Of a stretch of DNA of 64,000 bases, positions 1,125 through 60,930 are shown piece after piece. The position numbers and the translations under genes are program-made. Each line of letters begins with the position of its first letter. Within the stretch, counting starts at the first letter, position 1. The DNA is from Mobula hypostoma (taxonomy: Eukaryota). Location: positions 66,712,001 through 66,776,000 of the forward strand of contig NC_086103.1 of the NCBI RefSeq assembly GCF_963921235.1, read 5' to 3'. The notes beneath the pieces were generated by a model that made no database searches, was not told where the DNA came from, and saw nothing but the letters and a program-made list of their open reading frames with translations.

Positions 1125-2440
1125 TAATAACTAGTATCTGATGGCTGAGATTTACCACCATGAAGTGCTTTGAGAGGCAGGTCATGGCATGCATTGATTC
1201 CAGTCCCCTAGACAACTTTGACCCGTTTCAATTTGCCTGCCACCAAAAGGGGTCTACAGTAGGTATAATCTTCCTGGAACTACACTCATCTCTGATACAT
1301 CTGGTCAGTAAAGACACCTATGTCTTTACTGATATTGATAACAGCTTCACCTTCAGTAAAATAATACCAAGCAAACTCCTCTCTAAACTCCTAGACTTGG
1401 GACGCAGCACCTCCCTGTGCAAATTGATGCTCAACTTGCTGAACAATGGACCGCAATCAGTAAGGATAGGCAGCAACACCTCTGTAATGATTATTCTCAA
1501 TGCTGGTGCCCCATGAGAATGCGTCCACAGCCGCTTACTCTGCTTCCTGTACACTTACGACAGTGTGGCCAGCTTCTGCTTTAACTCCATCCATAAGTTT
1601 GCATACAATGCCACTATAGTGGGCTGTATGTCAAATAATGATGTGTCAGGTTACAGGAAGGAAACGGAGAGTGTAGTAACATCGTGACGTGACAACAGCT
1701 TTTCCCTCCTTCTCAGTAAAGCAAAAGTGCTGGACATTGACTTCAGGAAGGGGGCGGGCAGTGGGCAGAGTATATGCTCCTGCTTGTATCAATGGTCAAA
1801 AAGGTTGAGAGTTTCAAGTCCCTAGGAATGAATATTATCAATAGCCTGCTCTGGTATAACTACATTGAGGTCACGGCCAAGAAAGCTTGCCAGTGTCTCT
1901 GCTTCCTCAGGACGCTAATGAAACTTTGCATCCCTCTTTGGACCTTCAATAATTCTTATTACTGTCCAATAGAAGGCACCTTCTCTGGATGTGTCATGCT
2001 TGGTATGGCAACAGCTCTGTCTGTGACTGCAACAAACTGCAGAGAACTGTGGACACAGCTCAGCATATCACTCTCTGTCGAATCTGTCTACAATTCTTGC
2101 TGCCTTAGTAAACCAGTTGGCATAATTAAAGACCCCACTTACCCCAGGCATGCTCTCCTCCACCCCTGCCTATCAGGCAGAAGATGGAAAAACTTGAAAG
2201 CACACATCACCAGGCTCATGGACAGCTTCCAACCCATTGTAGTAACTCATTGAGTGTTTGAAAAGATTGTCTCTTGACTTCACAATCTACCTTGTACCTT
2301 GCTCCTTATTCTCTACCCACTGTAGCTGTGACACTTCCCTTTGTGCTATCCCTTTATGAACTGATCTGCATGAACTTTATGCAAGACAAGTTTTGCCCTG
2401 TATCTTGGTACATGTCACAAGAATAAATCAATTTGCCAAT
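1125..2440 (+). mobile_element. Rex1/Babar-like LINE, degraded RT to 3' end
   Basis: MKCFERQV..FDPFQFA..KIIPSKLLSKLLDLG..PQSVRIGSNTS..LNAGAP; downstream IKDPTYPRHALL..LSGRRWKNLKAHITRLMDSF; AATAAA near 2422. Confidence 0.85.
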
Positions 2441-7411: not shown

Positions 7412-8500
7412 TGTCACAATGGGAGATGCTGGGAATGGACCCAAGTGCAAGACACAGACACTGAAGTACAAGGAACAGGACTTGACTAGAGTAGGGACGT
7501 GACAGGATACAGGTAAGGAGCAAGGATAAGAACTCAGACTTCGGCTAGGACATGGACTAGACAGGGAACCCGGACTAGGAACCATGAACTAGGAGCCTGG
7601 GCTTGGGAAAGTGGGACCAGGACAAGGAACCATGAACGAGGAGCCTGGGCTTGGGAAAGCGAGACCAAGACTAGGAACCATGATCAAGGAGCCTGGGCTT
7701 GGACTCCGAGCCAGAGACTGGACAAGGACCCAGAACCTGGGTCTTGCCTTGGGCTCGGACCCCAGAACTAGGTAAGGACATGAAGTGGCTGGGGTCTTGA
7801 AGCTTGGGACTGGGGTCTTGGGGGGCTGGGGTCTTGAGGCTTGAGGGTGCAGGCTGGGGTCTTGGAATGCGGAGGTTGATAACTTGGAGGTGGAAGCTTG
7901 GAAACAGACTGGGAACTGTACATCAACATAGAGCCGGGACTAATCCTTAGACAAGCTGGGGCTAACTTTATCTCCACACCAAGGTGGGACAGGTCTATCC
8001 ATCAGGTAACAGCAACACGGCCAGACTTACTCAACAGAGGCAAAGACAAGACAAGACAGGTCCCCCCGCAGGGCAATGGCAAAACGGCCTGACTTACCCC
8101 ACTTAGGCAGGACAAGAAGAGACAAACACCGAAGAACGACAGACAGTTCCATCTCTGCATCGGGGTTGCTCCGAGTCGCAGTTACAGCCAGCAACCTTGG
8201 CTGGCTATGGAAACAGCCGGATCCCGACCTAGCTCGGAGTGGCTGACTCCATACCACAAAGACAGCTTCGACTACCGACAGCGAGTCTCCAAGAAGTGAT
8301 GTTCTCCAGTGCGGCCTAAAGATGTCAAGTGGCTGCTCCTAGGGAATCTTGACAAGACAAACCAGCAGCCCACACTTCACCCCAAGGCTACTCATATTCC
8401 AAGCCCCAAGATGGGAATCAAGTGCCTATGATTAACCCAACCGGAAAAAAGGGACAGCTGGAAGACCCGGAGTCCTGAGTCCACAGACCGGACCGTGATA
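7412..8500 (-). mobile_element. Probable solo LTR (1089 bp) with 5-bp TSD ATGGG
   Basis: Starts TGTCAC and ends GTGATA (GTGACA with one change). ATGGG occurs at 7407-7411 and 8501-8505, and the host element is contiguous once the insert is removed. No coding domains. Strand is inferred from a TATA-like motif and is tentative. Confidence 0.75.
7575..7703. repeat. 48-bp tandem repeat, ~2.7 copies, inside the solo LTR
   Basis: C(T/A)AGGAACCATGA..AGGAGCCTGGGCTTGG starts at 7575, 7623 and 7671. Confidence 0.9.
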
Positions 8501-8719
8501 ATGGGTGACCCTACCAGAAGCATAGCTCCAGACGGCATTGCTCTCGGGATCACAGGACTACACAAGCCCCTCCACCACGACAAGGTGACAATCCACGGAG
8601 AAGATACAGTATGTATACTTTGATAATAAATATACTTTGAACTTTGGCTAAGGTGGGTGGTGTGTAATGCTGGCTGCTTTCCCCAGACAGCGAGAAGTAC
8701 AGATAGAGTCCATGGAGGA

Positions 8720-8812
8720 AAGCAACACACAAGAAATGCTGGAGGAGCTCTGCAGATCAGGCAGCATCTGTGGAAAGAGTGACGTTTTGGGGCAAGACCC
8801 TTCAACAGGACT
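8720..8812 (-). mobile_element. Penelope-like element terminal (pLTR) fragment
   Basis: AAATGCTGGAGGAGCTC..CAGGCAGCATC..GACGTTTTGGGGCAAGACCCTTCAACAGGACT is the same motif family as at 22865-22995. Confidence 0.7.
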
Positions 8813-8814
8813 CA

Positions 8815-11800
8815 TGGTAGGGAGGCTGATTTATGTGATGTGCTGAACTAAGATTGCAGTTTCTTGTAGTCATAGGCAGAACAGTTGCCATAGCAACCCA
8901 TGATGCATCTGAATATGGTGCATTGATAAAAGTTGGTGAGGGTCAAACTGGACGTGCAAAACTTCTTTAGCTTCTTGATGAGCTTTCTTGGCCGTGGTGT
9001 CAATGTGGTTAGACCAGGACAAGTTACTGGTGATATTCACTTCTAGGAACTAGGAACTCTCTCTCAACCCTGTCAACCATAGAATGGTTGATGTAGACAG
9101 GAGCATGAGCACCACCATCCTTCCTGATGACAATGACAGCTTTTTAAAACTTTTGATGACATAGAGGGAAACTTGGTATCATAACACTTGTCACTCATTT
9201 CTCTTTTTCTTTACCGTAGTCATTATTTGAGATACGCCCTGGTACTGCAATCGTAGATGCAGTTAGAGGAGAATCTGGACATATAGTCATGAGTGTTGGG
9301 GTAGAGTAGATGGTTGATTCATGAGTGTATGGGGTAGAGTAGAGAGTTGAGGCAGGAGTGTATGGGGTAGAGTAGAGGGCTGAGGCAGGAGTGTATGGGG
9401 TAGAGTAGAGGGCTGAGACAGGAGAGTATGGGGTAGAGTAGAGGGTTGATTCATGAGTGTATGGGGTAGAGTAGAGGGCTGAGGCAGGAGTGTATGGAGT
9501 AGAGTAGAGGGTTGAGGCATGAGTGTATGGGGTAGAGTAGAGGGTTGATTCATGAGTGTATGGGGTAGAGTAGAGGGTTGAGGTAGGAGTGTATGGAGTA
9601 GAGTAGAGGGTTGAGGCATGAGTGTATGGGGTAGAGTAGAGGGTTGAGGCATGAGTGTATGGGGTAGAGTAGAGGGCTGAGGCAGGAGTGTTATAGGGTA
9701 GAGTAGAGGGTTGAGGCAGGAGTGTATGGGGTAGAGTAGAGGGCTGAGACAGGAGTGTATGAGGTAGAGTAGAGAGTTGAGGCAGGAGTGTTATAGGGTA
9801 GAGTAGAGGGCTGAGGCAGGAGTGTTATAGGGTAGAGTAGAGGGCTGAGGCAGGAGTGTATGGGGTAGAGTAGAGGGCTGAGACAGGAGAGTATGGGGTA
9901 GAATAGAGCACTAAGGCAGGAGTGTATGGGGTAGAGTAGAGGGTTGATTCATGAGTGTATGTGGTAGAGTAGAGGGCTGAGGCAGGAGTGTATGGGGTAG
10001 AGTAGAGGGCTGAGGCAGGAGTGTATGGGGTAGTGTAGAGGGTTGAGGCAGGAGTGTATGGGGTAGAGTAGAGGGCTGAGGCAGGAGTGTATGGGGTAGA
10101 GTAGAGGGCTGAGGCAGGAGTGTATGGGGTAGAGTAGAGGGATGAGGCAGGAGTGTATGGGGTAGAGTAGAGGGCTGAGGCAGGAGTGTATGGGTAGAGT
10201 AGAGGGTTGAGGCAGGAGTGTATGGGGTAGAGTAGAGGGCTGAGACAGGAGTGTATGAGGTAGAGTAGAGGGTTGAGACAGGAGTGTATGGAGTAGAGTA
10301 GAGGACTGAGGCATGAGTTTATGGGGTAGAGTAGAGAGCTGAGGCAGGAGTGTATGGGGTAGAGTAGAGGGTTGAGGCAGGAGTATATGGGGTAGAGTAG
10401 AGGGTTGAGGCAGGAGTGTATGGGGTAGAGTAGAGGGCTGATTCATGAGTGTACGGGGTAGAGTAGAGGTTGAGGCAGGAGTGTATGGGGTAGAGTAGAG
10501 GGTTGAGGCAGGAGTGTATGGGGTAGAGTAGAGGGCTGAGGCATGAGTGTATGGGGTAGAGTAGAGAGCTGAGGCAGGAGTGTATGGGGTAGAGTAGAGG
10601 GTTGAGGCAGGAGTATATGGGGTAGAGTAGAGGACTGAGGCAGGAGTGTATGGGGTAGAGTAGAGAGTTGAGGCAGGAGTGTATGGGGTAGTGTAGAGAG
10701 CTGAGGCAGGAGTGTATGGGGTAGAGTAGAGGGTTGAGGCAGGAGTGTATGGGGTAGAGTAGAGGGCTGAGGCATGAGTGTATGGGGTAGTGTAGAGGGC
10801 TGAGGCAGGAGTGTATGGGGTAGTGTAGAGAGCTGAGGCAGGAGTGTATGGGGTAGAGTAGAGGGTTGAGGCAGGAGTGTATGGGGTAGAGTAGAGGGCT
10901 GAGGCAGGAGTGTATGGGGTAGAGTAGAGAGTTGAGGCAGGAGTGTATGGGGTAGAGTAGAGAGTTGAGGCAGGAGTGTATGGGGTAGAGTAGAGGGCTG
11001 AGGCACGAGTGTATGGGGTAGAGTAGAGGGTTGAGGCAGGAGTATATGGGGTAGAGTAGAGGACTGAGGCAGGAGTGTATGGGGTAGAGTAGAGGGCTGA
11101 GGCAGGAGTGTATGGGGCAGAGTAGAGGGTTGAGGCAGGAGTGTATGGGGCAGAGTAGAGAGTTGAGGCAGGAGTGTATGGGGTAGAGTAGAGGGCTGAG
11201 GCATGAGTGTATGGGGTAGTGTAGAGAGCTGAGGCAGCAGTGTATGGGGTAGAGTAGAGGGTTGAGGCAGGAGTGTATGGGGTAGAGTAGAGGACTGAGG
11301 CAGGAGTGTATGGGGTAGAGTAGAGGGCTGAGGCAGGAGTATGGGGTAGAGTAGAGAGTTGAGGCAGGAGTGTATGGGGTAGAGTAGAGAGTTGAGGCAG
11401 GAGTGTATGGGGTAGAGTAGAGGGCTGAGGCACGAGTGTATGGGGTAGAGTAGAGAGCTGAGGCAGGAGTGTATGGGGTAGAGTAGAGGGTTGAGCAGGA
11501 GTATATGGGGTAGAGTAGAGGACTGAGGCAGGAGTGTATGGGGTAGAGTAGAGGGCTGAGACAGGAGTGTATGAGGTAGAGTAGAGGGTTGAGGCAGGAG
11601 TGTATGGGGTAGAGTAGGGGGCTGAGGCATGAGTGTATGGGGTAGAGTAGAGGGTTGAGGCAGGAGTGTATGGGGTAGAGTAGAGAGTTGAGGCAGGAGT
11701 GTATGGGGTAGAGTAGGGGGCTGAGGCATGAGTGTATGGGGTAGAGTAGAGAGCTGAGGCAGGAGTGTATGGGGTAGAGTAGAGGGTTGAGGCAGGAGTG

Positions 11801-14800
11801 TATGGGGTAGAGTAGAGGGCTGAGGCATGAGTGTACGGGGTAGAGTAGAGGGTTGAGGCAGGAGTGTATGGGGTAGAGTAGAGAGTTGAGGCAGGAGTGT
11901 ATGGGGTAGAGTAGAGGGCTGAGGCATGAGTGTATGGGGTAGTGTAGAGAGCTGAGGCAGGAGTGTATGGGGTAGAGTAGAGGGTTGAGGCAGGAGTGTA
12001 TGGGGTAGAGTAGAGGGCTGAGGCACGAGTGTATGGGGTAGAGTAGAGGGTTGAGGCAGGAGTATATGGGGTAGAGTAGAGGACTGAGGCAGGAGTGTAT
12101 GGGGTAGAGTAGAGGGCTGAGGCAGGAGTGTATGGGGCAGAGTAGAGGGTTGAGGCAGGAGTGTATGGGGTAGAGTAGAGGACTGAGGCAGGAGTGTATG
12201 GGGTAGAGTAGAGGGCTGAGGCAGGAGTGTATGGGGTAGAGTAGAGAGTTGAGGCAGGAGTGTATGGGGTAGAGTAGAGAGTTGAGGCAGGAGTGTATGG
12301 GGTAGAGTAGAGAGTTGAGGCAGGAGTGTATGGGGTAGAGTACAGGGCTGAGGCAGGAGTGTATGGGGTAGAGTAGAGGGTTGAGGCAGGAGTGTATGGG
12401 GTAGAGTAGAGGGCTGAGGCAGGAGTGTATGGGGTAGTGTAGAGAGCTGAGGCAGCAGTGTATGGGGTAGAGTAGAGGGTTGAGGCAGGAGTGTATGGGG
12501 TAGAGTAGAGGACTGAGGCAGGAGTGTATGGGGTAGAGTAGAGGGCTGAGGCAGGAGTGTATGGGGTAGAGTAGAGAGTTGAGGCAGGAGTGTATGGGGT
12601 AGAGTAGAGAGTTGAGGCAGGAGTGTATGGGGTAGAGTAGAGGGTTGAGGCATGAGTGTATGGGGTAGAGTAGAGGACTGAGGCAGGAGTGTATGGGGTA
12701 GAGTAGAGGGCTGAGGCAGGAGTGTATGGGGTAGAGTAGAGAGTTGAGGCAGGAGTGTATGGGGTAGAGTAGAGAGTTGAGGCAGGAGTGTATGGGGTAG
12801 AGTAGAGAGTTGAGGCAGGAGTGTATGGGGTAGAGTAGAGAGCTGAGGCATGAGTGTATGGGGTAGAGTAGAGGGCTGAGGCACGAGTGTATGGGGTAGA
12901 GTAGAGAGCTGAGGCAGGAGTGTATGGGGTAGAGTAGAGGGTTGAGCAGGAGTATATGGGGTAGAGTAGAGGACTGAGGCAGGAGTGTATGGGGTAGAGT
13001 AGAGGGCTGAGACAGGAGTGTATGAGGTAGAGTAGAGGGTTGAGGCAGGAGTGTATGGGGTAGAGTAGGGGGCTGAGGCATGAGTGTATGGGGTAGAGTA
13101 GAGGGTTGAGGCAGGAGTGTATGGGGTAGAGTAGAGAGTTGAGGCAGGAGTGTATGGGGTAGAGTAGGGGGCTGAGGCATGAGTGTATGGGGTAGAGTAG
13201 AGAGCTGAGGCAGGAGTGTATGGGGTAGAGTAGAGGGTTGAGGCAGGAGTGTATGGGGTAGAGTAGAGGGCTGAGGCATGAGTGTACGGGGTAGAGTAGA
13301 GGGTTGAGGCAGGAGTGTATGGGGTAGAGTAGAGAGTTGAGGCAGGAGTGTATGGGGTAGAGTAGAGGGCTGAGGCATGAGTGTATGGGGTAGTGTAGAG
13401 AGCTGAGGCAGGAGTGTATGGGGTAGAGTAGAGGGTTGAGGCAGGAGTGTATGGGGTAGAGTAGAGGGCTGAGGCACGAGTGTATGGGGTAGAGTAGAGG
13501 GTTGAGGCAGGAGTATATGGGGTAGAGTAGAGGACTGAGGCAGGAGTGTATGGGGTAGAGTAGAGGGCTGAGGCAGGAGTGTATGGGGCAGAGTAGAGGG
13601 TTGAGGCAGGAGTGTATGGGGTAGAGTAGAGGACTGAGGCAGGAGTGTATGGGGTAGAGTAGAGGGCTGAGGCAGGAGTGTATGGGGTAGAGTAGAGAGT
13701 TGAGGCAGGAGTGTATGGGGTAGAGTAGAGAGTTGAGGCAGGAGTGTATGGGGTAGAGTAGAGAGTTGAGGCAGGAGTGTATGGGGTAGAGTACAGGGCT
13801 GAGGCAGGAGTGTATGGGGTAGAGTAGAGGGTTGAGGCAGGAGTGTATGGGGTAGAGTAGAGGGCTGAGGCAGGAGTGTATGGGGTAGTGTAGAGAGCTG
13901 AGGCAGCAGTGTATGGGGTAGAGTAGAGGGTTGAGGCAGGAGTGTATGGGGTAGAGTAGAGGACTGAGGCAGGAGTGTATGGGGTAGAGTAGAGGGCTGA
14001 GGCAGGAGTGTATGGGGTAGAGTAGAGAGTTGAGGCAGGAGTGTATGGGGTAGAGTAGAGAGTTGAGGCAGGAGTGTATGGGGTAGAGTAGAGGGTTGAG
14101 GCATGAGTGTATGGGGTAGAGTAGAGGACTGAGGCAGGAGTGTATGGGGTAGAGTAGAGGGCTGAGGCAGGAGTGTATGGGGTAGAGTAGAGGGCTGAGG
14201 CAGGAGTGTATGGGGTAGAGTAGAGAGTTGAGGCAGGAGTGTATGGGGTAGAGTAGAGAGTTGAGGCAGGAGTGTATGGGGTAGAGTAGAGAGTTGAGGC
14301 AGGAGTGTATGGGGTAGAGTAGAGAGCTGAGGCATGAGTGTATGGGGTAGAGTAGAGGGCTGAGGCACGAGTGTATGGGGTAGAGTAGAGAGTTGAGGCA
14401 GGAGTGTATGGGGTAGAGTAGAGGGCTGAGGCACGAGTGTATGGGGTAGAGTAGAGAGTTGAGGCAGGAGTGTATGGGGTAGAGTAGAGGACTGAGGCAC
14501 GAGTGTATGGGGTAGAGTAGAGGGCTGAGGCAGGAGTGTATGGGGTAGAGTAGAGAGTTGAGGCAGGAGTGTATGGGGTAGAGTAGAGGGTTGAGGCAGG
14601 AGTGTATGGGGTAGAGTAGAGAGTTGAGGCAGGAGTGTATGGGGTAGAGTAGAGAGTTGAGACAGGAGTGTATGGGGTAGAGTAGAGGGCTGAGGCAGGA
14701 GTGTATGGGGTAGAGTAGAGAGTTGAGGCAGGAGTGTATGGGGTAGAGTAGAGGACTGAGGCAGGAGTGTATGAGGTAGAGTAGAGGGCTGAGGCAGGAG

Positions 14801-17030
14801 TGTATGGGGTAGAGTAGAGGGCTGAGGCAGGAGTGTATGGGGTAGTGTAGAGGACTGAGGCAGGAGTGTATGGGGTAGAGTAGAGGGCTGAGGCACGAGT
14901 GTATGGGGTAGAGTAGAGGGCTGAGGCACGAGTGTATGGGGTAGAGTAGAGGGTTGAGGCAGGAGTATATGGGGTAGAGTAGAGGACTGAGGCAGGAGTA
15001 TATGGGGTAGAGTAGAGGGTTGAGGCAGGAGTGTATGGGGTAGAGTAGAGGGCTGAGGCAGGAGTGTATGGGGTAGAGTAGAGGGCTGAGGCACGAGTGT
15101 ATGGGGTAGAGTAGAGGGTTGAGGCAGGAGTATATGGGGTAGAGTAGAGGACTGAGGCAGGAGTGTATGGGGCAGAGTAGAGGGTTGAGGCAGGAGTGTA
15201 TGGGGTAGAGTAGAGAGTTGAGGCAGGAGTGTATGGGGTAGAGTAGAGGGCTGAGGCAGGAGTGTATGGGGTAGAGTAGAGAGTTGAGGCAGGAGTGTAT
15301 GGGGTAGAGTAGAGGGCTGAGGCAGGAGTGTATGGGGTAGAGTAGAGAGTTGAGGCAGGAGTGTATGGGGTAGAGTAGAGAGTTGAGGCAGGAGTGTATG
15401 GGGTAGAGTAGAGAGTTGAGGCAGGAGTGTATGGGGTAGAGTAGAGAGCTGAGGCATGAGTGTATGGGGTAGAGTAGAGGGCTGAGGCACGAGTGTATGG
15501 GGTAGAGTAGAGAGTTGAGGCAGGAGTGTATGGGGTAGAGTAGAGGGCTGAGGCACGAGTGTATGGGGTAGAGTAGAGAGTTGAGGCAGGAGTGTATGGG
15601 GTAGAGTAGAGGACTGAGGCACGAGTGTATGGGGTAGAGTAGAGGGCTGAGGCAGGAGTGTATGGGGTAGAGTAGAGAGTTGAGGCAGGAGTGTATGGGG
15701 TAGAGTAGAGGGTTGAGGCAGGAGTGTATGGGGTAGAGTAGAGAGTTGAGGCAGGAGTGTATGGGGTAGAGTAGAGAGTTGAGACAGGAGTGTATGGGGT
15801 AGAGTAGAGGGCTGAGGCAGGAGTGTATGGGGTAGAGTAGAGAGTTGAGGCAGGAGTGTATGGGGTAGAGTAGAGGACTGAGGCAGGAGTGTATGAGGTA
15901 GAGTAGAGGGCTGAGGCAGGAGTGTATGGGGTAGAGTAGAGGGCTGAGGCAGGAGTGTATGGGGTAGTGTAGAGGACTGAGGCAGGAGTGTATGGGGTAG
16001 AGTAGAGGGCTGAGGCACGAGTGTATGGGGTAGAGTAGAGGACTGAGGCAGGAGTGTATGGGGTAGAGTAGAGGGTTGAGGCAGGAGTGTATGGGGTAGA
16101 GTAGAGGACTGAGGCAGGAGTGTATGGGGTAGAGTAGAGAGCTGAGGCAGGAGTGTATGGGGTAGAGTAGAGGGTTGAGGCATGAGTTTATGGGGTAGAG
16201 TAGAGGACTGAGGCAGGAGTGTATGGGGTAGTGTAGAGGGCTGAGGCACGAGTGTATGGGGTAGAGTAGAGAGCTGAGGCAGGAGTGTATGGGGTAGAGT
16301 AGAGGGCTGAGGCAGGAGTGTATGGGGTAGAGTAGAGAGTTGAGGCAGGAGTGTATGGGGTAGAGTAGAGAGTTGAGGCAGGAGTGTATGGGGTAGAGTA
16401 GAGGGCTGAGGCACGAGTGTATGGGGTAGAGTAGAGAGTTGAGGCAGGAGTGTATGGGGTAGAGTAGAGGGCTGAGGCACGAGTGTATGGGGTAGTGTAG
16501 AGAGTTGAGGCAGGAGTGTATGGGGTAGAGTAGAGAGTTGAGGCAGGAGTGTATGGGGTAGAGTAGAGGGCTGAGGCACGAGTGTATGGGGTAGAGTAGA
16601 GGACTGAGGCAGGAGTGTATGGGGCAGAGTAAAGAGCTGAAGACACAGTTTTGTCATGATAACAAGCGTGGTGGAATTGTTGCTGCCTATCCTTGCTAAC
16701 CTAAGTCTGTTGGTCAAGAAGTCAACAATCCAATTGCAAAGGGAGGTGTTGAGTCCTAGGTTTAGGATTATGGATATGAGTTTGCCTGGAATTACAGTAT
16801 TGAAAGTGGAGCTGTAATCTATAAACAACAGTCCAACATAAGTGTTTTTATTGTGCCAATATTGCACAAATGAGTGTAGATCCAGGGAGATGGTGTCTGC
16901 CATAGACTTGTTTTGGCAGTGGGCTAAAGTTGTCTGGGAGGCTAGAGATGATGGGTGTCATGACCGGCGTCTTAAAGCACTACATGATAGTGAATGTCAG
17001 AGCCACTGGGCAAGGGTATTAAGGTAATTT
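8815..17030 (-). mobile_element. Rex1/Babar-like LINE RT, split in two by the 33-bp array
   Basis: Right arm (16645-16990): LLFIDYSSTFNTVIPGKLISIILNLGLNTSLCNWIVDFLTNR..RIGSNNSTTL. The left arm (below 9290) continues THDYMSRFSSNCIY, followed by degraded downstream RT sequence. Confidence 0.85.
9287..16640. repeat. 33-bp G-rich minisatellite, ~220 copies
   Basis: Consensus TGAGGCAGGAGTGTATGGGGTAGAGTAGAGGG(C/T); 11-aa periodicity in all three minus-strand frames (PQPSTLPHTLL, CLSPLLYPIHS, ASALYSTPYTP). Confidence 0.98.
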
Positions 17031-20000
17031 ACATTGTTTTTCTTAGGTGTAGTGGTAATAGTGGTTTTCAAAATCCAGCACAGAGCCGTTAATAGCATCA
17101 CTAAGAAATGCAAAAGAAACACTTTCTCAAATAGTTCTAATATTTGGCATTATTAGGAGGAGTGAAACTGATAAGCAGAGGTATATTTAAGATGAATTTG
17201 GCTTTATATATGACAGAGTGCTATGTTTATGCAGTAGACCATAGACCAGAAAGGTGGGAAGGTCTGCCTCTGTGTAGTCGACTTTATGTGCCTGAAAGCT
17301 CCAACAATGCTGAAGTAGAGAACTCATAAGTTGGAACCTTTTAGGTGCTTCATGTGGAACTGCCCACAGCTCTACCATGTGCTTGCCTCTTGCACAAGTA
17401 TGCAAGTATTAAACTTGGTGGCTGAGTCTTGGCTGCATTTTGCTACTGGCTGCACCAGTGGACTTCAAACTTGCTGACCTTCTCTGAGCCAACACCGGCA
17501 AAACTCCCCTCTATCCTGCACAAGATGCAGGAAACCTGCACTGTGCTGCAACAAACGGCAGCAACAACCAGTTACATTTGTCCTTGATTATATCAGAAGT
17601 GTTGCGAGGGAGTTTTACAAATACTTAATAGTTTTAAAAGCATAATTGCTTTATTGACGTTAGTAGACTCTGAACATAAAAGATTTTCAAAAAAAGAGCA
17701 TTTAAAACAAGACAGTTTTGACAACTGTCAGCTTTTCTAGTCATTTTGTTTGTAGGCCTTTCTTCAACCTGTTCATTTGACTCATAAGGCCCTGATACTA
17801 TACTCCAACCCACCAGTTAAAGGATATGTCATCTTCTTTTCCACTTGCCAGTGCAGTCACGATTTGTGGGTGCTTGTGAACTATATGTTTATCATACATT
17901 TATCTTGTTTAAAATCCTTTATTTTAAAGCAGAGTCTCAAAGCTGTATAAACATCTGTTCATCCCCGCTGATCTTTCGGGGTCACTGCAGTGCATTCTTC
18001 GTAACGTACTCCTGCACCTCAGAATGCGATAGTCAGCAGCATGCAGTTGAGGAAATTTCTTTGCACTGGAAGACAAGTAAGTATTGAGCTGACCACACTG
18101 CACTGCACCTTTCACTAAGCTGATGAATATCCAGCAGCAGTTGTTGCTTAGTACCTTGAAGTGATGGACTTCCAGACCAGATTCCATGGACTGGGTTCCA
18201 CAAAAGCACATTCTATTTAAGTAACGATGAAGCAGACCTCACAGATGAAGTGATGACCTATGAGAATGATTAGCCCTTGTTATCCATTGAGTTATACACA
18301 ACTTAATAAAACTGAAAATGAGATCCAGGCATTAACCAATTTGCATGCTAAGGGCCTTGATAAGTTTGTCTTCAGATACATGGAGAATCTGTAAGGAAAA
18401 TAACTGGCAGTGGAATCCATGGTAACCCCATGGTTTACGATTCATTTTTCATTGCATGATGCACAAAATGGTGAATCAATGCAATTCCTGCCCTAGGCAT
18501 AGAAATTTGACCTATTGTCCAAAAATTGTAGATGAGTTCTCTTTCTATAGCAGGAACTTCGAATGATATGAGGTGACAAGATAATATAGCGCCACCTAGT
18601 GTTGTGATTACAAGCAATAGACGTTAACACTGGGATTCGCATTAGAACATAACCTGCTGATGTGATCAAAATAACTAAGTTTAGGTTTATAAGTAACAAA
18701 CACAAGGTGCTGTAGGAGCTCACCAGATCTCGCAGCAGCTATGGACAGGAATTAACAGTTGATGCTTTGAGCCAAGTCCCTTCTATTGTCTACATATAAA
18801 TTTAAAAAAATACTTGGAAGGTTTATCAAAATGTGGAAGATTTTTAATATAAAACCATTTTGTTCAAGATCGCTTTTCTTAGTATCTCCCTAGATTTCTA
18901 GGAATTCAGTTTGTTTTCTCAGAACACTAATTGGAAACTGAAGTTGTCAAAGGATCAAATTAAAAAAACACACATGGAATTTTCCAAAAGATTTATTACT
19001 TATGATTTTTTAAAAATGTAAGAAAATATCAAGCTGTCTGATATTATACTGTGAATCCTAGAAAATGAGGGCATCTGACTTCTCAGTTCAGTGAGATTAT
19101 GCAACTATTCAGAAACTATTTCCACCAGGATTTATGCAAGCATAAATTCTTGTCAAACCTCAGAGCTGTGAAATATAACACTCAGATAGACATTTCATAG
19201 TTAGAGTAATTGACAAGCCTTGTGCAAACTAACTCTCAGAGTCGACATGCCTCACAATTTGATCTTTCCTCATAGCACAGGTTATCCATTTGATACAAAA
19301 GGATGTATATTGAAAAAATATGTTCTCTTTTGAAATAGGGAATGAACAATTTGCAAACTTAATTTTGGCAGTATTAATTTGTTATGCCCCTTGTTGCTGA
19401 AGCAATGCAATATTAATATTCATTATAGCATTATTATGTTATAATGAATTTATTTTTATTCAGAATTTCTGATAATTACAAACTGTGCTTGTCCAATTCT
19501 CAGATGTTTCTGCTCTCATCAGGCATTGGGAGTTGCCTCTTACAGCTTGAGAAGCCTGGCTTGCTCACTATAGACCTTGAATAGATGGACAATATACTCA
19601 CCTTGGCTGTTCAGTGTCTGTTTGATCTGCTACACAATGCACAATAACTCCGTGTTAGTAGAGAACAGTGGGAGATCCATGACAGGTAACCAAGTGAACT
19701 AAAAGGAAGCTTGATTCAAAGAGATTTTGGTCACCATCGCTGCTCTTTACTGCTCAGTCAGCATGTTCTCTACCATCTCAGTGATGAAGTTAGTACCTGA
19801 ACAAGAGTCCTTTGCAGAATGTCGACTTCCAAAGTACAGAGGCTGTTCAAGGGAACCTCAGCCACTGAACTGATGTCTGAGCAGCCTGTATCTGCCTCTG
19901 CTGAGACTACAAGGTTTGTACTTTATAGGCATTCTAGGAATAGGAAGAATATACTTTTGTCTTGTTCTAGGGTACACACACAGTTGTTTAGAACGTTGAT

Positions 20001-20194: not shown

Positions 20195-21540
20195 GCCATA
20201 AAACCATAAAACATTGGAGCAGAATTAAGCCATTTGGCCCACTGAGTCTGCTTCACCATTTGATCATGGCAGATTTATTATCCCTCTCAATCCATTTTCC
20301 TGCCTTCTCCCCATTACCTCTGATGCCCTTACTAATCAAGAACCCATAAACTTCCGTTTTAAGTAAGTTCATTGAGTTGGCCTCCACAGGCATCCATGGC
20401 AATGAATTCCACAGATTCACCACTCTCTGGCGAAAGAAATTCCTTCTCATCTGTTCAAATGAGACATCCTTGTATTCTGAGGTTGTGTCCTCTGGTCCTA
20501 GACTTCCCCACCACTGGAAACATCCTCTCAACATCCACTCTATCTGGACTTTCAATATGCAATAGGTTCGATAAGATCCGCGCCTCCCCCACCCCCCACC
20601 ACCATTCTTGCACACTCCAGCAAGCACAGGCTCACAGTCATTAAATGCTCCTCATACGTTAACCCTTTCATTCCCTGGATCATTCTCATGAACTTCCTCT
20701 GGATCCTCTCGAAACTCCAGCACATCCTTGCTTAGATGAAGGGCTCAAAGCTGTTCACAATACTCCAAATGCGATCTGACCAACACCTTATAAAGCCTCA
20801 GCATTACACCTTACTTTTATATTCTAGTCCCTAAAATGAACATAACATTGCATTTGCTTTCCTTATCACTAAATCAACCTGCAAGTTAACCGTTAGGGAA
20901 TCTTTACTGGGAATTTCAAGTCCTTTGTATCTCCAGGTTATGAATTTGTTCCCCATTTAGACCTTTAGTCTACACCACCAAAGTGCACGACCATAAACTT
21001 ACACTTTATTCCATCTTGCAAACCCTATCCCTTATTTATTTATTTATTTATCTATCTATCTATTTTCTTTTCCCCCCTTTTTTCCCTCTCTTTCTTCTCC
21101 CTCTGTCCCTCTCAGTATAACTCCTTACCCATCCTCTGTGCTTTCCCCCCTCCCCCTTTCTTTCTCCCTAGGCCTCCTGTCCCATGATCCTTCCCCTTCT
21201 CCAGCTTTGTATCCCTTTTGCCAATCAACTTTCCAGCTCTTAGCTCCATCCCTCCCCTTCCTATCATTTTGGATCTCCCCTTCCCCCCCAACTTTCAAAT
21301 CTCTTATTATCTCTTCTTTCAGTTAGTCCTGATGAAGGGTCTCGGCTCGAGACATTGACTGTACCTCTTCCTGTAGATGCTACCTGGCCTGCTGCGTTCA
21401 CCAGCATTTTTTGTGTGTGTTACTTTATTCCATCTGTCACTTTTTTGCCCATTCTCCTGATCTGTCCAATTCCTTCTGCAGACTCCTTGCTCCTTGCTTC
21501 CTGCCTGCCCCTCCACCTATATATGTTTGCCCACAAACTT
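20195..21540 (-). mobile_element. CR1 LINE 3' portion, interrupted at ~21020-21420 by a Penelope fragment
   Basis: Minus translation RRNFFRQRVVNLWNSLPW; CR1 3' UTR at ~20195-20280; RT sequence resumes at ~21420-21545. Confidence 0.85.
21020..21420 (+). mobile_element. Penelope-like element 3' end with decayed hammerhead motif
   Basis: Pyrimidine-rich tract followed by AGTC-CTGATGA-AGGGTCTCGGCTC-GAGACATT-GACT..GATGCTACCTGGCCTGCTGCGTTCACCAGCATTTTTTGTGTGT; closely similar to 26760-27050. Confidence 0.8.
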
Positions 21541-22864: not shown

Positions 22865-24275
22865 AGAAAATCTGCAAATGCCAGAAATCCAAGGCAACAC
22901 AGACACAAGGCTGGAGGAACTCAGCAGGTCAGGCAGCATCTGTGGAAATGAATAAACAGTTGACGTTTCAGGCCGAGACCTTTCTCGGAGCTGGAAAGGA
23001 AGGGGGAAGATGCCTGAATAAAAATATGGGGTGGGGGGGAGAAGCAGAATGGCTGGAGGGTGATAGGTGAAGCCAGGGAAAGGTCAAGGGCTGGAGAGGA
23101 AGGAATCTGATAGGAGAGGAGAGTGAACATAGGGAGAAAGGGAAGGAGAAGGGGCACCCAGGGGGAGGTGGTAAGCAAATAGGAAGAGGTAAGAGGCCAA
23201 AGTGGGGAATAGAAGAAGAGGGGAAGAGGGGGGAAATTCTTTTTACTGGAAAGAGAAATCGATGTTCATGCCATCAGGTTGGAGGCTACCCAGACAAAGG
23301 ATTTCGGCCTGAAACGTTGACTGTGCTCTTTTCGATAGATGCTGCCTGGCCTGCTGAGTTCCTCCAGCATTTTGTGTGTGTCGCTTCAGAATACTGTATA
23401 AGGTGTTGTTCCTCCACCCTGTGTGGCCTCATCGTGGCAGAAGAGGCGGCCATGGACCAGCATGTTTGAACAGGAATGGGAATTGGAATTAAAATGTTTT
23501 TCCACTGGGAAGTTCTGCTTTTGGAGGATGGAGTGGGGGTGCTCGACAAAGTGGTCCCCCAATTTACGACGTGTTTCACCAATGTAGAGGAGGCTGCACA
23601 GGAGCACCGGACACAATAGACCACCCCAACAGATTCGCAGGTGAAGCACTATCTCTCCTGGAAGGACTGTTTGGGGCCCTGAATGCAGGTGAGGGAGGAG
23701 GTGTGTAGGCAGGTGTAGCACTTTGGTTGCTTGAGGGGGTGTTGGGAGGGAGATTAGTGGGGGAGGCATAAATAAACAAGGGAATTGCAGAGAGAGTGAT
23801 CCCTGTGGAAACTGGAGGGGTGGGGGAAGGAGATGTGAGGTAAAGATATGTTTGGTGTTATGATCCCTTTGGAGATGTTGTGGAGAATGATGTATTGAAT
23901 GTGGAGGCTCATGGAGTGGTAGGTAAGGGCAAGAGGAACGGAGTTGGTAAGTGATAGGTGAATCTGGGTGAGAGGGAGTAAAACAGGAGATAATATGAGA
24001 AGCTGAGCGATAAGAGGTGGAAGAGCCAATGAGTTGAAAAAGATGGAATCTGATAGGAGAGGACAGTTCACCAGGGAATAAAGGGAAGGAGGAACCAGTG
24101 GAAAGTGAAGGTGATGGGCATGTCGTTACGGTGGGGTAGGAGAGAGATAAGAGGTAAAGTGGCTAGAACAATAAGGGAAAAGAAAAGGAGTAACAGAGGT
24201 GTGTGGTTACTAGAAGTTCGAGAAATCAATCCTGTGGCCGTCAGGTTGGAGACTACCAATTCAGAATATAGAGTA
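22865..24275 (-). mobile_element. Penelope-like element cluster with GIY-YIG endonuclease remnant and an inverted pLTR piece at ~23290-23385
   Basis: Minus frames give VYCVRCS / LLYIGETRRKLGDHFVEH..FPVEKHFNSNSHSCSNMLVHG..VEEQHLI, the PLE GIY-YIG C-terminus. Confidence 0.85.
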
Positions 24276-25589: not shown

Positions 25590-25692
25590 ACAAGAGAAAA
25601 TCTGCAGAAGCTGGAAATCCAAATAACACACAGAAAATGCTGGAGGAACTCAGCAGGCCAGGCCTGCTCAGTTCCTCCAGCATTTTGTGTAT
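25590..25692. mobile_element. Head-to-head Penelope terminal fragments forming a hairpin
   Basis: AAAATGCTGGAGGAACTCAGCAGGCC-A-GGCCTGCTCAGTTCCTCCAGCATTTT at ~25634-25686. Confidence 0.8.
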
Positions 25693-25939: not shown

Positions 25940-27275
25940 TGCTTCTCCCGTTGCTTCTCGCTCTTGATTCTCCGTGTAACATTCTATTTCCGTTATGCCA
26001 TGGCCTCCTTTAATGCCACGATAAAGCCACATTCAGGTTAGAGAGGTAACACCTCATATTCTGTTCTGGTAGCCTCCAACCTGATGGTATCAACATTGTT
26101 TTCTCTGACTTCTGGTACATTCTCCCCCTCCCTTCTTTGCTCTTTTGTCCATTCCCATTCTGGCTCTCTGACACCCTTTTTTTTCCTCACCTGACCATCG
26201 CCGTCCTCTGGAACTCAACCTCTTTCCCTTTCTTCCATGGTCCACTGTCATCTCCTATCCTATCATCTTCAACCCTTTATGTCTTTCTACTATCCCCTTC
26301 CAGCTTCTTACTTCACCATTACCTCCCTCATAGACCCGACGCAGACTGGGAGACCGTTTCGCTGAACATCTGTGCTCTGTCCACCAGAGAAAGCAGGATC
26401 TCCCAGTGGCCACACATTTTAATTCCACGTCCCATTCCCATTCTGATATGTCTATCCACGGCCTCCTCTACTGTCAAGATGAAGCCACACTCAGGTTGGA
26501 GGAACAACACTTTATATTCCGTCTGGGTACCCTCCAACCTGATGGCACGAACATTGACTTCTCTAACTTCCATTAATGCCCCTCCTCNNNNNNNNNNNNN
26601 NNNNNNNNNNNNNNNNNNNNNNNNNNNNNNNNNNNNNNNNNNNNNNNNNNNNNNNNNNNNNNNNNNNNNNNNNNNNNNNNNNNNNNNNNNNNNNNNNNNN
26701 NNNNNNNNNNNNNNNNNNNNNNNNNNNNNNNNNNTCCTCGCCTGCTCTCCATCTTCCTCTGGCGCTCCTCTCCCCCTTTCTTTGTCCCTAGGCCTCCCAT
26801 CCCATGATCCTCTCTCTTCTCCAGCCTTGTATCCCTTTTGCCAATCACCTGTCCAGCTCTTGGTTCCATCCCTCCCCCTCCTGTCTTCTCCTATCATTTT
26901 GGATCTCCCCCTTCCCCCTCACTTTCAAATCTCTCACTATCTCTTCTTTCAGTTAGTCCTGTCAAAGGGTCTCGGCCTGAAACGTCAGCTGTGCTTCTTC
27001 CTATGGATGCTGCCTGGCCTGCTGCGTTCACCAGCATTTTGTGTGTGTTGCTTGAATTTCCAGCATCTGCAGATTTCCTCGTATCTACCAACGTACTCCT
27101 TAGCATTCACTCCTTCTTATTCTGACTTCAGCCTTCTTTTTTTAAGTCCTGATGAAGAGTCACAGCACGAAATGTTAATTATTTATTCCCTTCCATAGGT
27201 GCTACCTGATTGAGCTCCTCCAGTATTTTGTGTGTATTATTCATTATTTCCAGCATCTGCAGAATCTCTCGTGTG
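25940..27275 (+). mobile_element. Nested Penelope-like 3' fragments (GIY-YIG C-terminus plus pLTRs)
   Basis: 26337-26570 reads RRRLGDRFAEHLCSVHQRKQDLPVATHFNSTSHSHSDMSIHGLLYCQDEATLRLEEQHFIFRLGTLQPDG. An older copy of the same segment lies at ~25950-26120; pLTR motifs at ~26950 and ~27145. Confidence 0.85.
26588..26734. other. Assembly gap (147 N)
   Basis: Run of n characters inside the pyrimidine-rich part of a Penelope element. Confidence 1.
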
Positions 27276-27835: not shown

Positions 27836-29440
27836 TTCTCTGAAATTGCGTGTTTTGCAGCAGTATTACAGTGTAACGTGCAAAATTTAAAATAAGGATA
27901 TGTATTAATAAGTAAATGAATAGTGCTAAAAGAGAGGAAAATAGTGAGATAGTATTTTGGGTTCATGGTCTGTTCGGAAATCACAGCAAGAAAAAGCTTT
28001 GCCTGAAAAGTTGAGTGTGTCTCCAGCTTCCTGTACCTCCTAAATGTAGTAATGTTACATTTGCTCTTTTCAAATCTGTAAGAACCAATATAAAATTTAT
28101 GGAACTTATGAAGATGACAGCCTCTGAAATTATGACCTCCATAGCAACTCCTTTCAATACCTTGGGATGCAGGTCCTGGGAGTTTATTGCCTTTTTGTCC
28201 CCTTAGTTTCTCCAGTCTGATTCACATTTTTTTCATGTCCTTACTCATTCTAGACCTGTGGTCCTTCACTACCACTGGGAGGTATTCCTTATCTTCTTCC
28301 ATGAACACAGTACAAGGTATTTGGTTAATTTCTCTGTACTTAGCTTATTCCCCATTCTCTTCTGTCAGGTACACTTTTGCTCATCTTTTCCTATTGATAG
28401 AGTGTATCTGTACAACACTTAACATTGGTTTTCATGCTTCTTGTCAGGTTACTCGCATTACTTTTCTTTAGCAATTTCTTGCACCTCCTTTAATGAATTT
28501 TGATATTTTCCCAATTCTCAGATTCTTTATGACAAATATTAGATATCTTTCCAAAATTTAATACTATCTTATTAATCATAAGTAGACCCCAAGTTTCAGT
28601 GTCTTGAACAGAATGTGTTATTTGCTCTAAACTATAGATTAATTCTTTCAATATTAGCTAATGGAAGGAGATTAGTATTTGAATTGCTTTCTTCCATGTT
28701 TCATTCTATATTTAAACTTAGATAATTTTCTTTAAGTATGTAACATTCTAATATTTTCTTCTTGAAAACTATGGAAAATGGCCAAAATCTAGAAATACAA
28801 TATCATCTCCCAAGGTTCTATGTTCTGTAATAGACATATGAGACTCTGTCAACACTTCTAATAAAATATTATCTCCCTGATTTTCTCTTTCAAACACAAA
28901 CTTAAAAGGAAAAGTATTGACCTAAATTCAAAAAGCTTTCAGAAAGATTTATTGCAATAGCAGTCTAAACGAACCAGTAAACCAATCCAGACAAACTACA
29001 AGAGGTACATAATGTATTCATTTTGGTAGGTGCTCTCTGCTAGGATTTCAAGAAATTGTAATTATGGCTATGCATAAATTTCATTTTAGCTTCAAAGTAT
29101 AGCTTAATTGTGAATTATTCAACTTTAAAGTACGTTAAACTTTGAATTGCCCAATTTGGCTTGACATACAATGTATAAACTGAAGTAGTTAATGGTATAA
29201 ATAGTTTAATGTTCAGTTCCTTGGAATTGAGGAGCATTTGAATTAGTAGGAGTAAACTGGGACATGTGGTGGCACAATTACCGATTTTGCCCAACAAATC
29301 TATACTGAAAGGAAAATTGTCTGTGGGGTCGGGGGGGTGGGGGGTGGATGACGATAAGGGGCCAGAATAACATGGGTACCCTCAGCGATTATTAAGCTGA
29401 ATAAGAACAGGCACATTTGTGCCTGTGTGTATAATATTAC

Positions 29441-54499: not shown

Positions 54500-54608
54500 A
54501 CATACAAAATGCTAGAGACCCTTCAGCAGGACTTGGCTCAAAACAACGACTGTACGTTTTTCCATAGATGCTGCCTGGCCTGCTGAGTTCCTCCAGCATT
54601 TTGTTATG
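54500..54608. mobile_element. Miniature Penelope-derived insert with inverted ends, inside the Gypsy 3' region
   Basis: CATACAAAATGCT..AGCATTTTGTTATG termini; pLTR pieces in both orientations. Confidence 0.7.
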
Positions 54609-60379: not shown

Positions 60380-60930
60380 GAGAGAAAATGCTGGAGATAC
60401 TTAGCAAGCCAGGTAGCATTAATGAAAAGAGAAAGAGGGTTAACATTTTGAAATAACAGCCCATCATCAGAACTAGAAAACCAAGAAAACACTTTGACCT
60501 TAAGAGAACTGGAAATGTGGGAATTTAGAAAGATCAAGGGTAAAGTCTGCGATAAGATTGAGATCAAAGCTGTCCAGGTGACACAAATACTTCAGCTGAC
60601 AGAGGCTGATGACTACTTGTTAAATACCCAAGATCTAAAGGACTGTGACTTAAAAAATGTGCTGGAGCTGTCAGGTGCAGAACACAGGGGTGGCTGGAAA
60701 TATGAAACAGAGGAAATTCGAGTGATACTCTGCAGATCAGTGAGTATTGGTGGAGAGAGTGAACCCCTGAATTACTGTTACAGGTGAATGACTTGACATC
60801 AGAAGCCACCAGTACTGATGCAGGTGGGGAAGTCTGAATTTAGCACTGAATCTCGAGGGCTCCCTTGTACCAATTGAGGTATTGCTCCTGGAGCTGACAT
60901 TGAGTGTTCATCGGAACAGTGTAGGAGCCA
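60380..60930 (-). mobile_element. Old Penelope-like 3' fragments
   Basis: AAAATGCTGGAGATACTTAGCAAGCCAGGTAGCA; rc GTTCTGATGATGGG..CAAAATGTTAACC; decayed endonuclease tail at ~60830-60930. Confidence 0.55.

What the first reader, a model, noticed from the sequence alone, without database searches (positions are those of the whole stretch)
9287..16640. A 7.3-kb minisatellite born from 33 bp of a LINE reverse transcriptase, with the parent gene still around it
Seen: the right arm ends just before the PQG motif (..RIGSNNSTTLVI). The repeat unit in one minus frame reads CLSPLLYPIHS, versus the recalled RT motif VLSPLLYSLYTHD. The left arm resumes with THDYMSRFSSNCIY, versus THDCVARFSSNSIYKFADD. An unexpanded homologous segment lies in this window at ~1518-1600. 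The ancestral-like variant (CATGAGTG, rc CACTCATG, THD codons) is concentrated at the left edge, while CAGGAGTG dominates the interior. This is an unusually clear record of a TE coding segment turning into a large tandem array in situ.
Basis: partly seen in the sequence, partly recalled or inferred. Interest (0 to 1): 0.75.

Follow-up and report, generated by a model that had tools for sequence, protein, structure and literature searches.

The report
Minisatellite grown inside dead LINE copy
A 7.4-kb run of 223 copies of a 33-base unit has grown in place out of a short stretch of the reverse-transcriptase gene of one dead retrotransposon copy; it is a very clean example of an already well-known way that minisatellites arise.

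Summary
TRF finds one array at 9291-16640 (period 33, 222.8 copies, 92% matches). My segmentation gives 223 units on the minus strand, 16648 to 9292.

Both flanks are collinear pieces of one degraded, 5'-truncated LINE reverse transcriptase. The right arm ends at residue 686 of a natural relative (just before PQG) and the left arm resumes at 703 (THD). The unit matches the stretch between them.

The edge copies are in register with the flanks. Three unexpanded relatives carry the segment once. Junction variants form a graded series along the array.

Short-read contigs of the same species confirm the right junction. Depth of the array words there is no higher than this one array explains.

A relative about 2% diverged has the arm, the first unit and the start of the second, so the array began before the two split.

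The kind is known: 23% of human mini/satellites derive from mobile elements, and satellites derived from LINE ORF2 are described. This scan has already found the same thing on other DNA of this genome, including another 33-base array from 11 reverse-transcriptase codons. No function is indicated. Interest is low to moderate.

The parts
16649..17000 (-). Right arm: upstream part of the reverse transcriptase of a degraded, 5'-truncated LINE copy. It ends ...RIGSNNSTTLVI-MTK, just before the PQG motif, and probably extends upstream to about 17150.
   Evidence: tblastn places 16927-16652 on P0002 residues 595-686 at 53% identity, E 1.6e-24 (alignment). The word search gave E 4e-22 to proteins carrying RVT_1. 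Pfam RVT_1 on the arm alone is weak (E 0.004, below the cut-off). blastn gives 68% identity to the other copy at 1145-1478. Relative to that copy, 11 bp are missing in the GAPQ region.
16613..16648 (-). First (RT-upstream) unit. It is 36 bp long and still carries the TGTGTC (Cys-Val) codons that interior units lack.
   Evidence: alignment A2 places it on the G-C-V-L-S codons of three unexpanded LINE sequences.
9292..16648 (-). The minisatellite: 223 head-to-tail units, 213 of them 33 bp, 49 variants. The plus strand is G-rich (GC skew +0.81).
14163..16041 (-). Exact higher-order duplication: units 20-41 are identical to units 54-75 (offset 34 units, 757 bp identical).
11401..14192 (-). Exact higher-order duplication: units 76-115 are identical to units 120-159 (offset 44 units, 1341 bp identical).
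9292..9322 (-). Last (RT-downstream) unit, 31 bp. It runs straight into CATGACT, the His-Asp codons of the left arm.
8651..9291 (-). Left arm: downstream part of the same reverse transcriptase, from THD onward. It has several frameshifts, a deletion in the FADD region, and a short interspersed-repeat insert at about 8712-8812.
   Evidence: Local alignments to P0002 703-715, 719-732, 763-788, 792-816, 821-866 and 869-905, collinear. blastn gives 66% identity to the other copy at 1807-2041 and shows the insert's dispersed matches.
1145..2250 (+). A second, older copy of the same LINE family, carrying the homologous segment once (about 1520-1566).

Best explanation
A LINE of the CR1/Rex1-like kind inserted here on the minus strand, 5'-truncated, and decayed. 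A 33-bp piece of its reverse-transcriptase sequence then duplicated in tandem. The piece runs from the Leu-Ser codons of the conserved G-C-V-L-S-P-L-L-Y stretch to the first base after the T-H-D codons. It already carried a 2-bp deficit that breaks the frame.

The junction that best fits the variants is ...CATGACT joined to CAGCCC..., which implies only 2 bp (CT) of microhomology. The array then grew to 223 units by out-of-register exchange or slippage between copies. Growth included two recent multi-unit steps of 34 and 44 units.

New junction variants spread through the interior, while the copies next to the flanks stayed closest to the original gene. The array most likely has no function; it is a neutral by-product.

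What is shown: the array, the collinear arms, the register of the edge units, the single-copy state in other copies, the variant gradient, the block duplications, and the presence of the arm and the array start in a close relative.

What is inferred: the exact first duplication endpoints, the exchange mechanism, and neutrality.
For: - Array: TRF; 223 units, 49 variants.
- Arms. The right arm ends at P0002 residue 686 and the left arm starts at 703. The left arm continues collinearly to 905. The unit frame CLSPLLYPIHS aligns to residues 693-705.
- DNA level: A1 and A2. The unit aligns to three unexpanded LINE sequences (a goby LINE, a Logan LINE and the window's other copy). A 2-bp gap is shared by the first, interior, near-edge and last units. 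The first unit keeps TGTGTC and the last unit runs into CATGACT.
- Junction-hexamer series: the flank reads ATGACT. ATGAAT occurs in 5 units, all in the last quarter. ATGCCT occurs in 21 units, CTGCCT in 165, and GTGCCT in 19, of which 11 are in the first quarter.
- Edge decay: 2.2-3.0 edits per unit at the left end against 1.2-1.5 in the interior, and 6 of the 10 odd-length units lie among the last 36.
- Block duplications of 757 and 1341 identical bases.
- Reads: contigs of organism A cover 16547-16912 (3 differences) and 16595-16912 (0 differences) and bridge the junction. Depth ratios of the array words are 20-48 against 44-46 copies in this array. A contig of organism B (49 differences and 16 gaps over 2396 bases) holds the arm and unit 1 and stops inside unit 2.
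- No other occurrence in the window.
Against: - Only the right junction could be laid on reads, so the left junction and the total length rest on the assembly alone.
- Organism A's sample may be the one the window was assembled from (0 differences in 2117 bases), so it is not independent support for length.
- Contig depth is a crude copy-number measure. The two runs of one sample disagree (ratios 20 and 48).
- In organism B, array-type contigs appear in one run (about 5-7 times single copy) and hardly at all in the other.
- The first-duplication register is not unique. A 36-bp or a 40-bp first unit followed by a small deletion also fits.
I could not check whether it is the same segment.
Confidence: 0.88

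Rival explanations
1. The repeat was already present as a short internal tandem repeat in an active LINE subfamily and was spread by retrotransposition. On this view, this array is one of several related arrays rather than a purely local birth.
For: Ahmed and Liang describe such propagated repeats for LTR12.
Against: All units share a frame-breaking 2-bp deficit, and the copy has many other defects, so the parent was not a working element. Contigs of other family copies recruited at 88% identity or more diverge from this copy at 16705, before the array (loose ends). Array word depth is no higher than this one array explains. The three unexpanded relatives carry the segment once.
Confidence: 0.06
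2. The array is real, but its assembled length and the two perfect internal block duplications are assembly artefacts.
For: Blocks of 757 and 1341 identical bases inside a repeat are what a mis-joined long-read assembly could also produce. In run X1 the depth ratio is 20, against 46 copies in the window.
Against: In run X2 the ratio (47.6) matches the copy number in the window (44.1). The block boundaries are in unit register, and the blocks are flanked by differing units.
Confidence: 0.08
3. The two arms come from two different LINE copies brought together by rearrangement, with an unrelated satellite between them.
For: The left arm is more broken (several frameshifts) than the right arm, which has 92 residues in one frame.
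Against: The arms share a strand and collinear coordinates that abut within 16 residues, and the missing piece is the unit itself. Both edge units are in register with their flanks. The arms are equally diverged from the other copy, at 68% and 66%.
Confidence: 0.02
4. The array is a coding tandem repeat (an S/T/P-rich, mucin-like exon), because all three minus-strand frames stay open for about 1900-2200 residues.
For: Open frames of 2212, 2234 and 1914 residues. Two frames are rich in Ser, Thr and Pro.
Against: The frames are open only because the C/T-rich strand cannot spell stop codons. Nine units have lengths that are not a multiple of 3 (31, 32 or 34 bp), so no frame is kept. There are no protein relatives. 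The sequence is flanked by dead LINE sequence.
Confidence: 0.01

Closest known systems
TE-derived minisatellites of the human genome (Ahmed and Liang 2012, PMC3389668)
   Same: A tandem array is initiated inside one TE copy and expanded by local duplication of the unit. The paper counts at least 7,276 such repeats, 23% of human minisatellites and satellites.
   Different: Most human cases there have only two units, whereas this one has 223 units and 7.4 kb. The host here is a cartilaginous fish according to this scan's earlier notes. The source is a LINE coding segment rather than an Alu or an LTR.
Tandem repeats derived from LINE ORF2: PROsat (Phodopus), Pvc20 (harbour seal L1 ORF2) and chicken HinfI/CR1, as listed in the review PMC9659126
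   Same: The repeat unit is homologous to part of the reverse-transcriptase ORF of a LINE.
   Different: I know those cases only from the review's listing. Here both parental arms still flank the array at its birthplace, and it appears to be a single locus.
Other TE-born arrays in this same genome, reported earlier by this scan (s1-142002: 97 x 33 bp from 11 RT codons; s1-141869: 584 x 26 bp from a Rex1/Babar ORF; SINE- and LTR-born arrays)
   Same: The same process in the same genome, and in one case the same unit length and the same kind of parent gene.
   Different: They lie at different loci. Whether s1-142002 uses the same RT codons could not be checked here.
Haber-Louis model of minisatellite initiation between short flanking direct repeats (as summarised in PMC3389668)
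   Same: By my own reading of the flanks, the amplified segment is bracketed by an imperfect direct repeat, ACTGTGTCTTCAG upstream and ACTATATGTCCAG downstream (9 of 13 bases). This repeat comes from the C-V-L-S and C-V-A-R codons.
   Different: Slippage between those repeats predicts a 40-bp unit. The observed unit is 33 bp, and its best-fitting junction has only 2 bp of microhomology.

Membership tests
TE-derived minisatellite born in situ | Head-to-tail array with a unit of about 10-100 bp | tested here: met
   Period 33, 222.8 copies, 92% matches; 223 units.
TE-derived minisatellite born in situ | The unit is homologous to an internal segment of a transposable element | tested here: met
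   The unit frame CLSPLLYPIHS aligns to P0002 residues 693-705. The DNA alignment A2 matches three natural unexpanded LINE sequences.
TE-derived minisatellite born in situ | Both flanks continue the same TE copy, collinear and in register with the edge units | tested here: met
   The right arm ends at residue 686 and the left arm starts at 703 and runs to 905. The first unit keeps TGTGTC and the last unit runs into CATGACT.
TE-derived minisatellite born in situ | The segment is single-copy in other members of the TE family | tested here: met
   The window copy at 1145-2250, L001 and L002 each carry it once.
Dispersed satellite DNA family | The same unit forms arrays at many loci | tested here: not met
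   There is no copy elsewhere in the window. The depth of array words in the species' reads is 20-48 times single copy, against 44-46 copies in this array. This is a crude measure, and the whole assembly was not searchable.
LINE (non-LTR retrotransposon) reverse transcriptase | Homology to the RVT_1 domain in the order of its conserved motifs | tested here: met
   The arm matches proteins carrying RVT_1 and ALKBH8_N at E 4e-22. In P0002 the RVT_1 domain spans 550-797 at E 8e-34. The arm alone scores only E 0.004 against Pfam, below the cut-off.
Rex1/Babar clade of LINEs | Placement within the clade in a reverse-transcriptase phylogeny with reference elements | not tested
No reference Rex1/Babar sequences were available.
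Hypervariable minisatellite (VNTR) | Length differs among individuals | not testable with these tools
   Only short-read contigs were available. Array-type words appear weaker in the related species (5-7 times single copy in one run), which is only a hint.
Hypervariable minisatellite (VNTR) | Polar distribution of unit variants along the array | tested here: met
   ATGAAT occurs only in the last quarter, GTGCCT mostly in the first quarter, and odd-length and diverged units lie at the left end.

The most novel reading that the evidence does not exclude
This stretch of the LINE reverse transcriptase (motif B to just before FADD) may be a recurrent seeding site. The other 33-base, 11-codon array reported in this genome (s1-142002) would then come from the same codons in a different LINE copy. 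That would mean the sequence itself, or this ray genome's replication or repair, favours kilobase-scale expansion of particular TE segments. At least eight TE-born arrays are already noted in this genome.
Probability: 0.3. Interest if true: 0.45.

Novelty: new member of a known kind. Interest (0 to 1): 0.25.

Why it matters
Taken alone, this is a textbook-quality locus for how a minisatellite starts and grows. Both parental flanks survive, and the edge copies are still in register with the gene. A graded series of junction variants and two datable block duplications record its growth. A close relative carries the start of the array, so length and variant maps could be compared across species and individuals.

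It does not change what is known about minisatellite origin, and nothing points to a function.

Its practical relevance is for annotation. The array gives three spurious open frames of about 2000 residues.

It also adds one more case to what looks like a genome-wide tendency of this ray genome to inflate short TE segments into kilobase arrays.

Tried and rejected
- Hairpin-driven slippage. Three-unit stretches of either strand and both edges fold no better than shuffles as single-stranded DNA (z 0.2 to 0.9).
- Known RNA families. There are no Rfam matches at gathering score in the whole window.
- Pfam on the short left-arm pieces gave nothing. Collinearity was shown by alignment to natural relatives instead.
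- A protein search with 300 residues of translated array found nothing among 8000 candidates. This speaks against other annotated arrays or a coding repeat, within that tool's length limits.
- A findings search by sequence was blank.
- A 40-bp first unit formed between the flanking imperfect direct repeats was considered. I set it aside because it needs an extra 7-bp deletion, while a direct 33-bp duplication with a CT microhomology explains the junction variants with one change each.
- G-quadruplex potential and the resemblance of the derived junction (GGCAGGAG on the plus strand) to classic minisatellite core motifs were only recalled from memory. They were not tested and are not used.
Only natural sequences were compared.
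Full report
**1. The observation**

Tandem Repeats Finder reports one dominant array in the window: 9291-16640, period 33, 222.8 copies, 92% matches and no indels. The region stands out by composition, with GC about 0.54 and GC skew +0.81 on the plus strand.

A dynamic-programming segmentation on the minus strand gives 223 units from 16648 down to 9292. Of these, 213 are exactly 33 bp, and there are 49 distinct variants.

A 27-base core of the unit matches 215 times with up to 3 mismatches. All listed matches lie inside the array, and none is expected in shuffles. blastn with three units finds nothing elsewhere in the window.

**2. The flanks**

- the right arm, ...FIDYSSTFNTVIPGKL...NTSLCNWIVDFLTNRLRLARIGSNNSTTLVI, followed by MTK and the first unit;
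- the unit frame CLSPLLYPIHS;
- the left arm, THDYMSRFSSNCIY...

A word search restricted to the right-arm residues found fish LINE proteins that carry RVT_1 and ALKBH8_N, at E 4e-22 and 53% identity. In P0002 the RVT_1 domain spans 550-797.

Mapped on P0002:
- the right arm covers residues 595-686, ending at N-T of NTGAPQG;
- the left arm starts at 703 (THD) and continues collinearly through 719-732, 763-788, 792-816, 821-866 and 869-905, with several frameshifts;
- the unit frame aligns to 693-705.

The two arms are therefore on one strand and in one order. They abut at the very stretch that the unit resembles. Both are about equally diverged from a second, older copy of the family at 1145-2250 (68% and 66%). 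That copy carries the segment once, at about 1520-1566.

Pfam on the arm alone is only weakly positive (E 0.004).

**3. DNA-level register**

I fetched the DNA of two natural full-length relatives. I aligned their G-C-V-L-S-P-L-L-Y...T-H-D-C segment with the window's other copy, the right flank plus first unit, an interior unit, a near-edge unit, and the last unit plus left flank (A2).
- The unit aligns from the Leu-Ser codons to CATGACT.
- All array rows share a 2-bp gap relative to the three unexpanded sequences. The frame-breaking deficit therefore predates the amplification or was fixed very early.
- The first unit is 36 bp and still holds TGTGTC (the Cys-Val codons).
- The last unit runs directly into CATGACT (His-Asp plus one base) of the left arm.
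- The right arm lacks 11 bp in the GAPQ region relative to the other copy (A1).

The parent was therefore a dead copy.

**4. History written in the variants**

The six bases at the unit junction form a series:
- the flank reads ATGACT;
- ATGAAT occurs in 5 units, all in the last quarter next to the left arm;
- ATGCCT occurs in 21 units;
- CTGCCT occurs in 165 units;
- GTGCCT occurs in 19 units, 11 of them in the first quarter.

ATGACT is one change from ATGAAT and one change from ATGCCT. The simplest origin is a direct 33-bp duplication that joined ...CATGACT to CAGCCC..., with 2 bp (CT) of microhomology.

It is enriched at the left edge: 5 of the last 10 units against 21 of the other 213 (p = 0.0025). 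Most of its 26 copies are nevertheless interior.

The left end is also the most decayed. It shows 2.2-3.0 edits per unit against 1.2-1.5 in the interior, and 6 of the 10 odd-length units lie among the last 36.

Two perfect higher-order duplications exist:
- units 20-41 equal units 54-75 (757 identical bases);
- units 76-115 equal units 120-159 (1341 identical bases).

They show recent growth by out-of-register exchange in steps of 34 and 44 units.

**5. Evidence from public reads**

Two studies hold parts of the stretch. I laid contigs of two runs each from organism A and organism B on 16448-19000.

Organism A:
- Its contigs match the window without any difference over 2117 bases.
- Two contigs bridge the right junction (16547-16912 and 16595-16912).
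- It may be the assembled individual, so this confirms the junction but not the length.
- Array 61-63-mers have contig depths 20 and 48 times that of the single-copy flank. The same words occur 44-46 times in this array, so one locus suffices.
- Contig depth is a rough measure, and the tool warns against reading it as copy number.

Organism B:
- It differs by 49 substitutions and 16 gap positions over 2396 bases, about 2%.
- Its contig holds the flank, the LINE arm, the first unit and 8 bases of the second, and ends there, about 3 letters further on. This is the expected behaviour of a short-read contig entering a repeat.
- An unexpanded locus would have run on into the left arm.
- One of its two runs has an array-type 61-mer at about 7 times single-copy depth.
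- The LINE insertion and the start of the array therefore predate the split of A and B. The array may be shorter in B.

The conserved LINE core at 16706-16791 recruits about 110-180 times single-copy depth in all four runs, so the family is abundant. Contigs of those other copies diverge from this one at 16705, before the array.

**6. Mechanism and function**

The strands have no hairpin potential beyond shuffles, and there is no Rfam match.

The three minus-strand frames stay open for 1900-2200 residues. This is only because the C/T-rich strand cannot form stop codons. Nine units have lengths that are not multiples of three, and the translated array has no relatives.

I conclude that this is a neutral minisatellite. 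It grew by replication slippage and unequal exchange, and turnover was slower at its ends.

**7. Comparison with what is known**

Ahmed and Liang found that at least 7,276 tandem repeats, 23% of human minisatellites and satellites, derive from transposable elements and expand by local unit duplication. They also found that known initiation models explain only about 6% of them.

A review lists LINE ORF2-derived tandem repeats in hamster, seal and chicken.

Within this scan, the same genome has already yielded a 97-copy, 33-base array from 11 codons of a Rex1 reverse transcriptase and a 584-copy, 26-base array from a Rex1/Babar ORF. It has also yielded several SINE- and LTR-born arrays. Earlier notes call this genome a devil ray; I did not verify that. 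These are unchecked notes, and I could not see their sequences.

The present locus is thus a new member of a known kind. It is notable mainly for how cleanly it preserves its origin.

**8. What remains open**

- Whether the other 33-base array uses the same codons, which would make this RT stretch a recurrent seeding site.
- The true length and polymorphism of the array.
- The exact first duplication event.
- The LINE clade, which was not tested.

The masked N stretch at 26588-26734 was left untouched.

Noticed in passing
window 8712-8812 (inside the left arm); also 21325-21433, 22891-22948, 23330-23386, 25625-25663, 26955-27053, 27191-27235, 54559-54601, 60728-60762 and about 18684-18769: A short interspersed repeat core of roughly 40-100 bp occurs at nine or more places in the window. 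One copy is inserted into the LINE's left arm. The copy near 18684-18769 recruits about 70-140 times single-copy depth in both species, so it belongs to a very abundant SINE-like family.
   Followed up: partly
window 29427-32195 (+): Another LINE of a different family (about 22% identity to P0002). Its open pieces carry Exo_endo_phos and RVT_1.
   Followed up: partly
window 9949-16903 (-): The array yields mechanical ORFs of 2194, 813 and 494 residues with start codons, and stop-free frames of up to 2234 residues. These are likely to produce spurious gene models.
   Followed up: yes
window 16706-16791: The conserved core of the LINE arm (the NTSLCNWIVDFLT region) recruits about 110-180 times single-copy depth at 88% identity or more in all four runs. 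The family therefore has on the order of a hundred or more fairly similar copies in both species.
   Followed up: no
window 7568-7702: A 48-bp tandem repeat of 2.8 copies lies inside the element that another first-reader note (s1-143682) calls an RTE-type 5' end. That element abuts the truncated 3' end of the LINE at about 8600-8650.
   Followed up: no
whole genome (this scan's notes): This scan's notes list at least eight other kilobase-scale arrays in this genome that grew out of a short piece of a single TE copy, and 42 notes mention minisatellites. This suggests a genome-wide tendency that deserves a systematic count.
   Followed up: no
window 17544, 17560, 17688: The related species (organism B) has a 14-bp insertion and two single-base indels in the unique flank, with about 2% substitutions overall. 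These could serve as markers for orthology.
   Followed up: no
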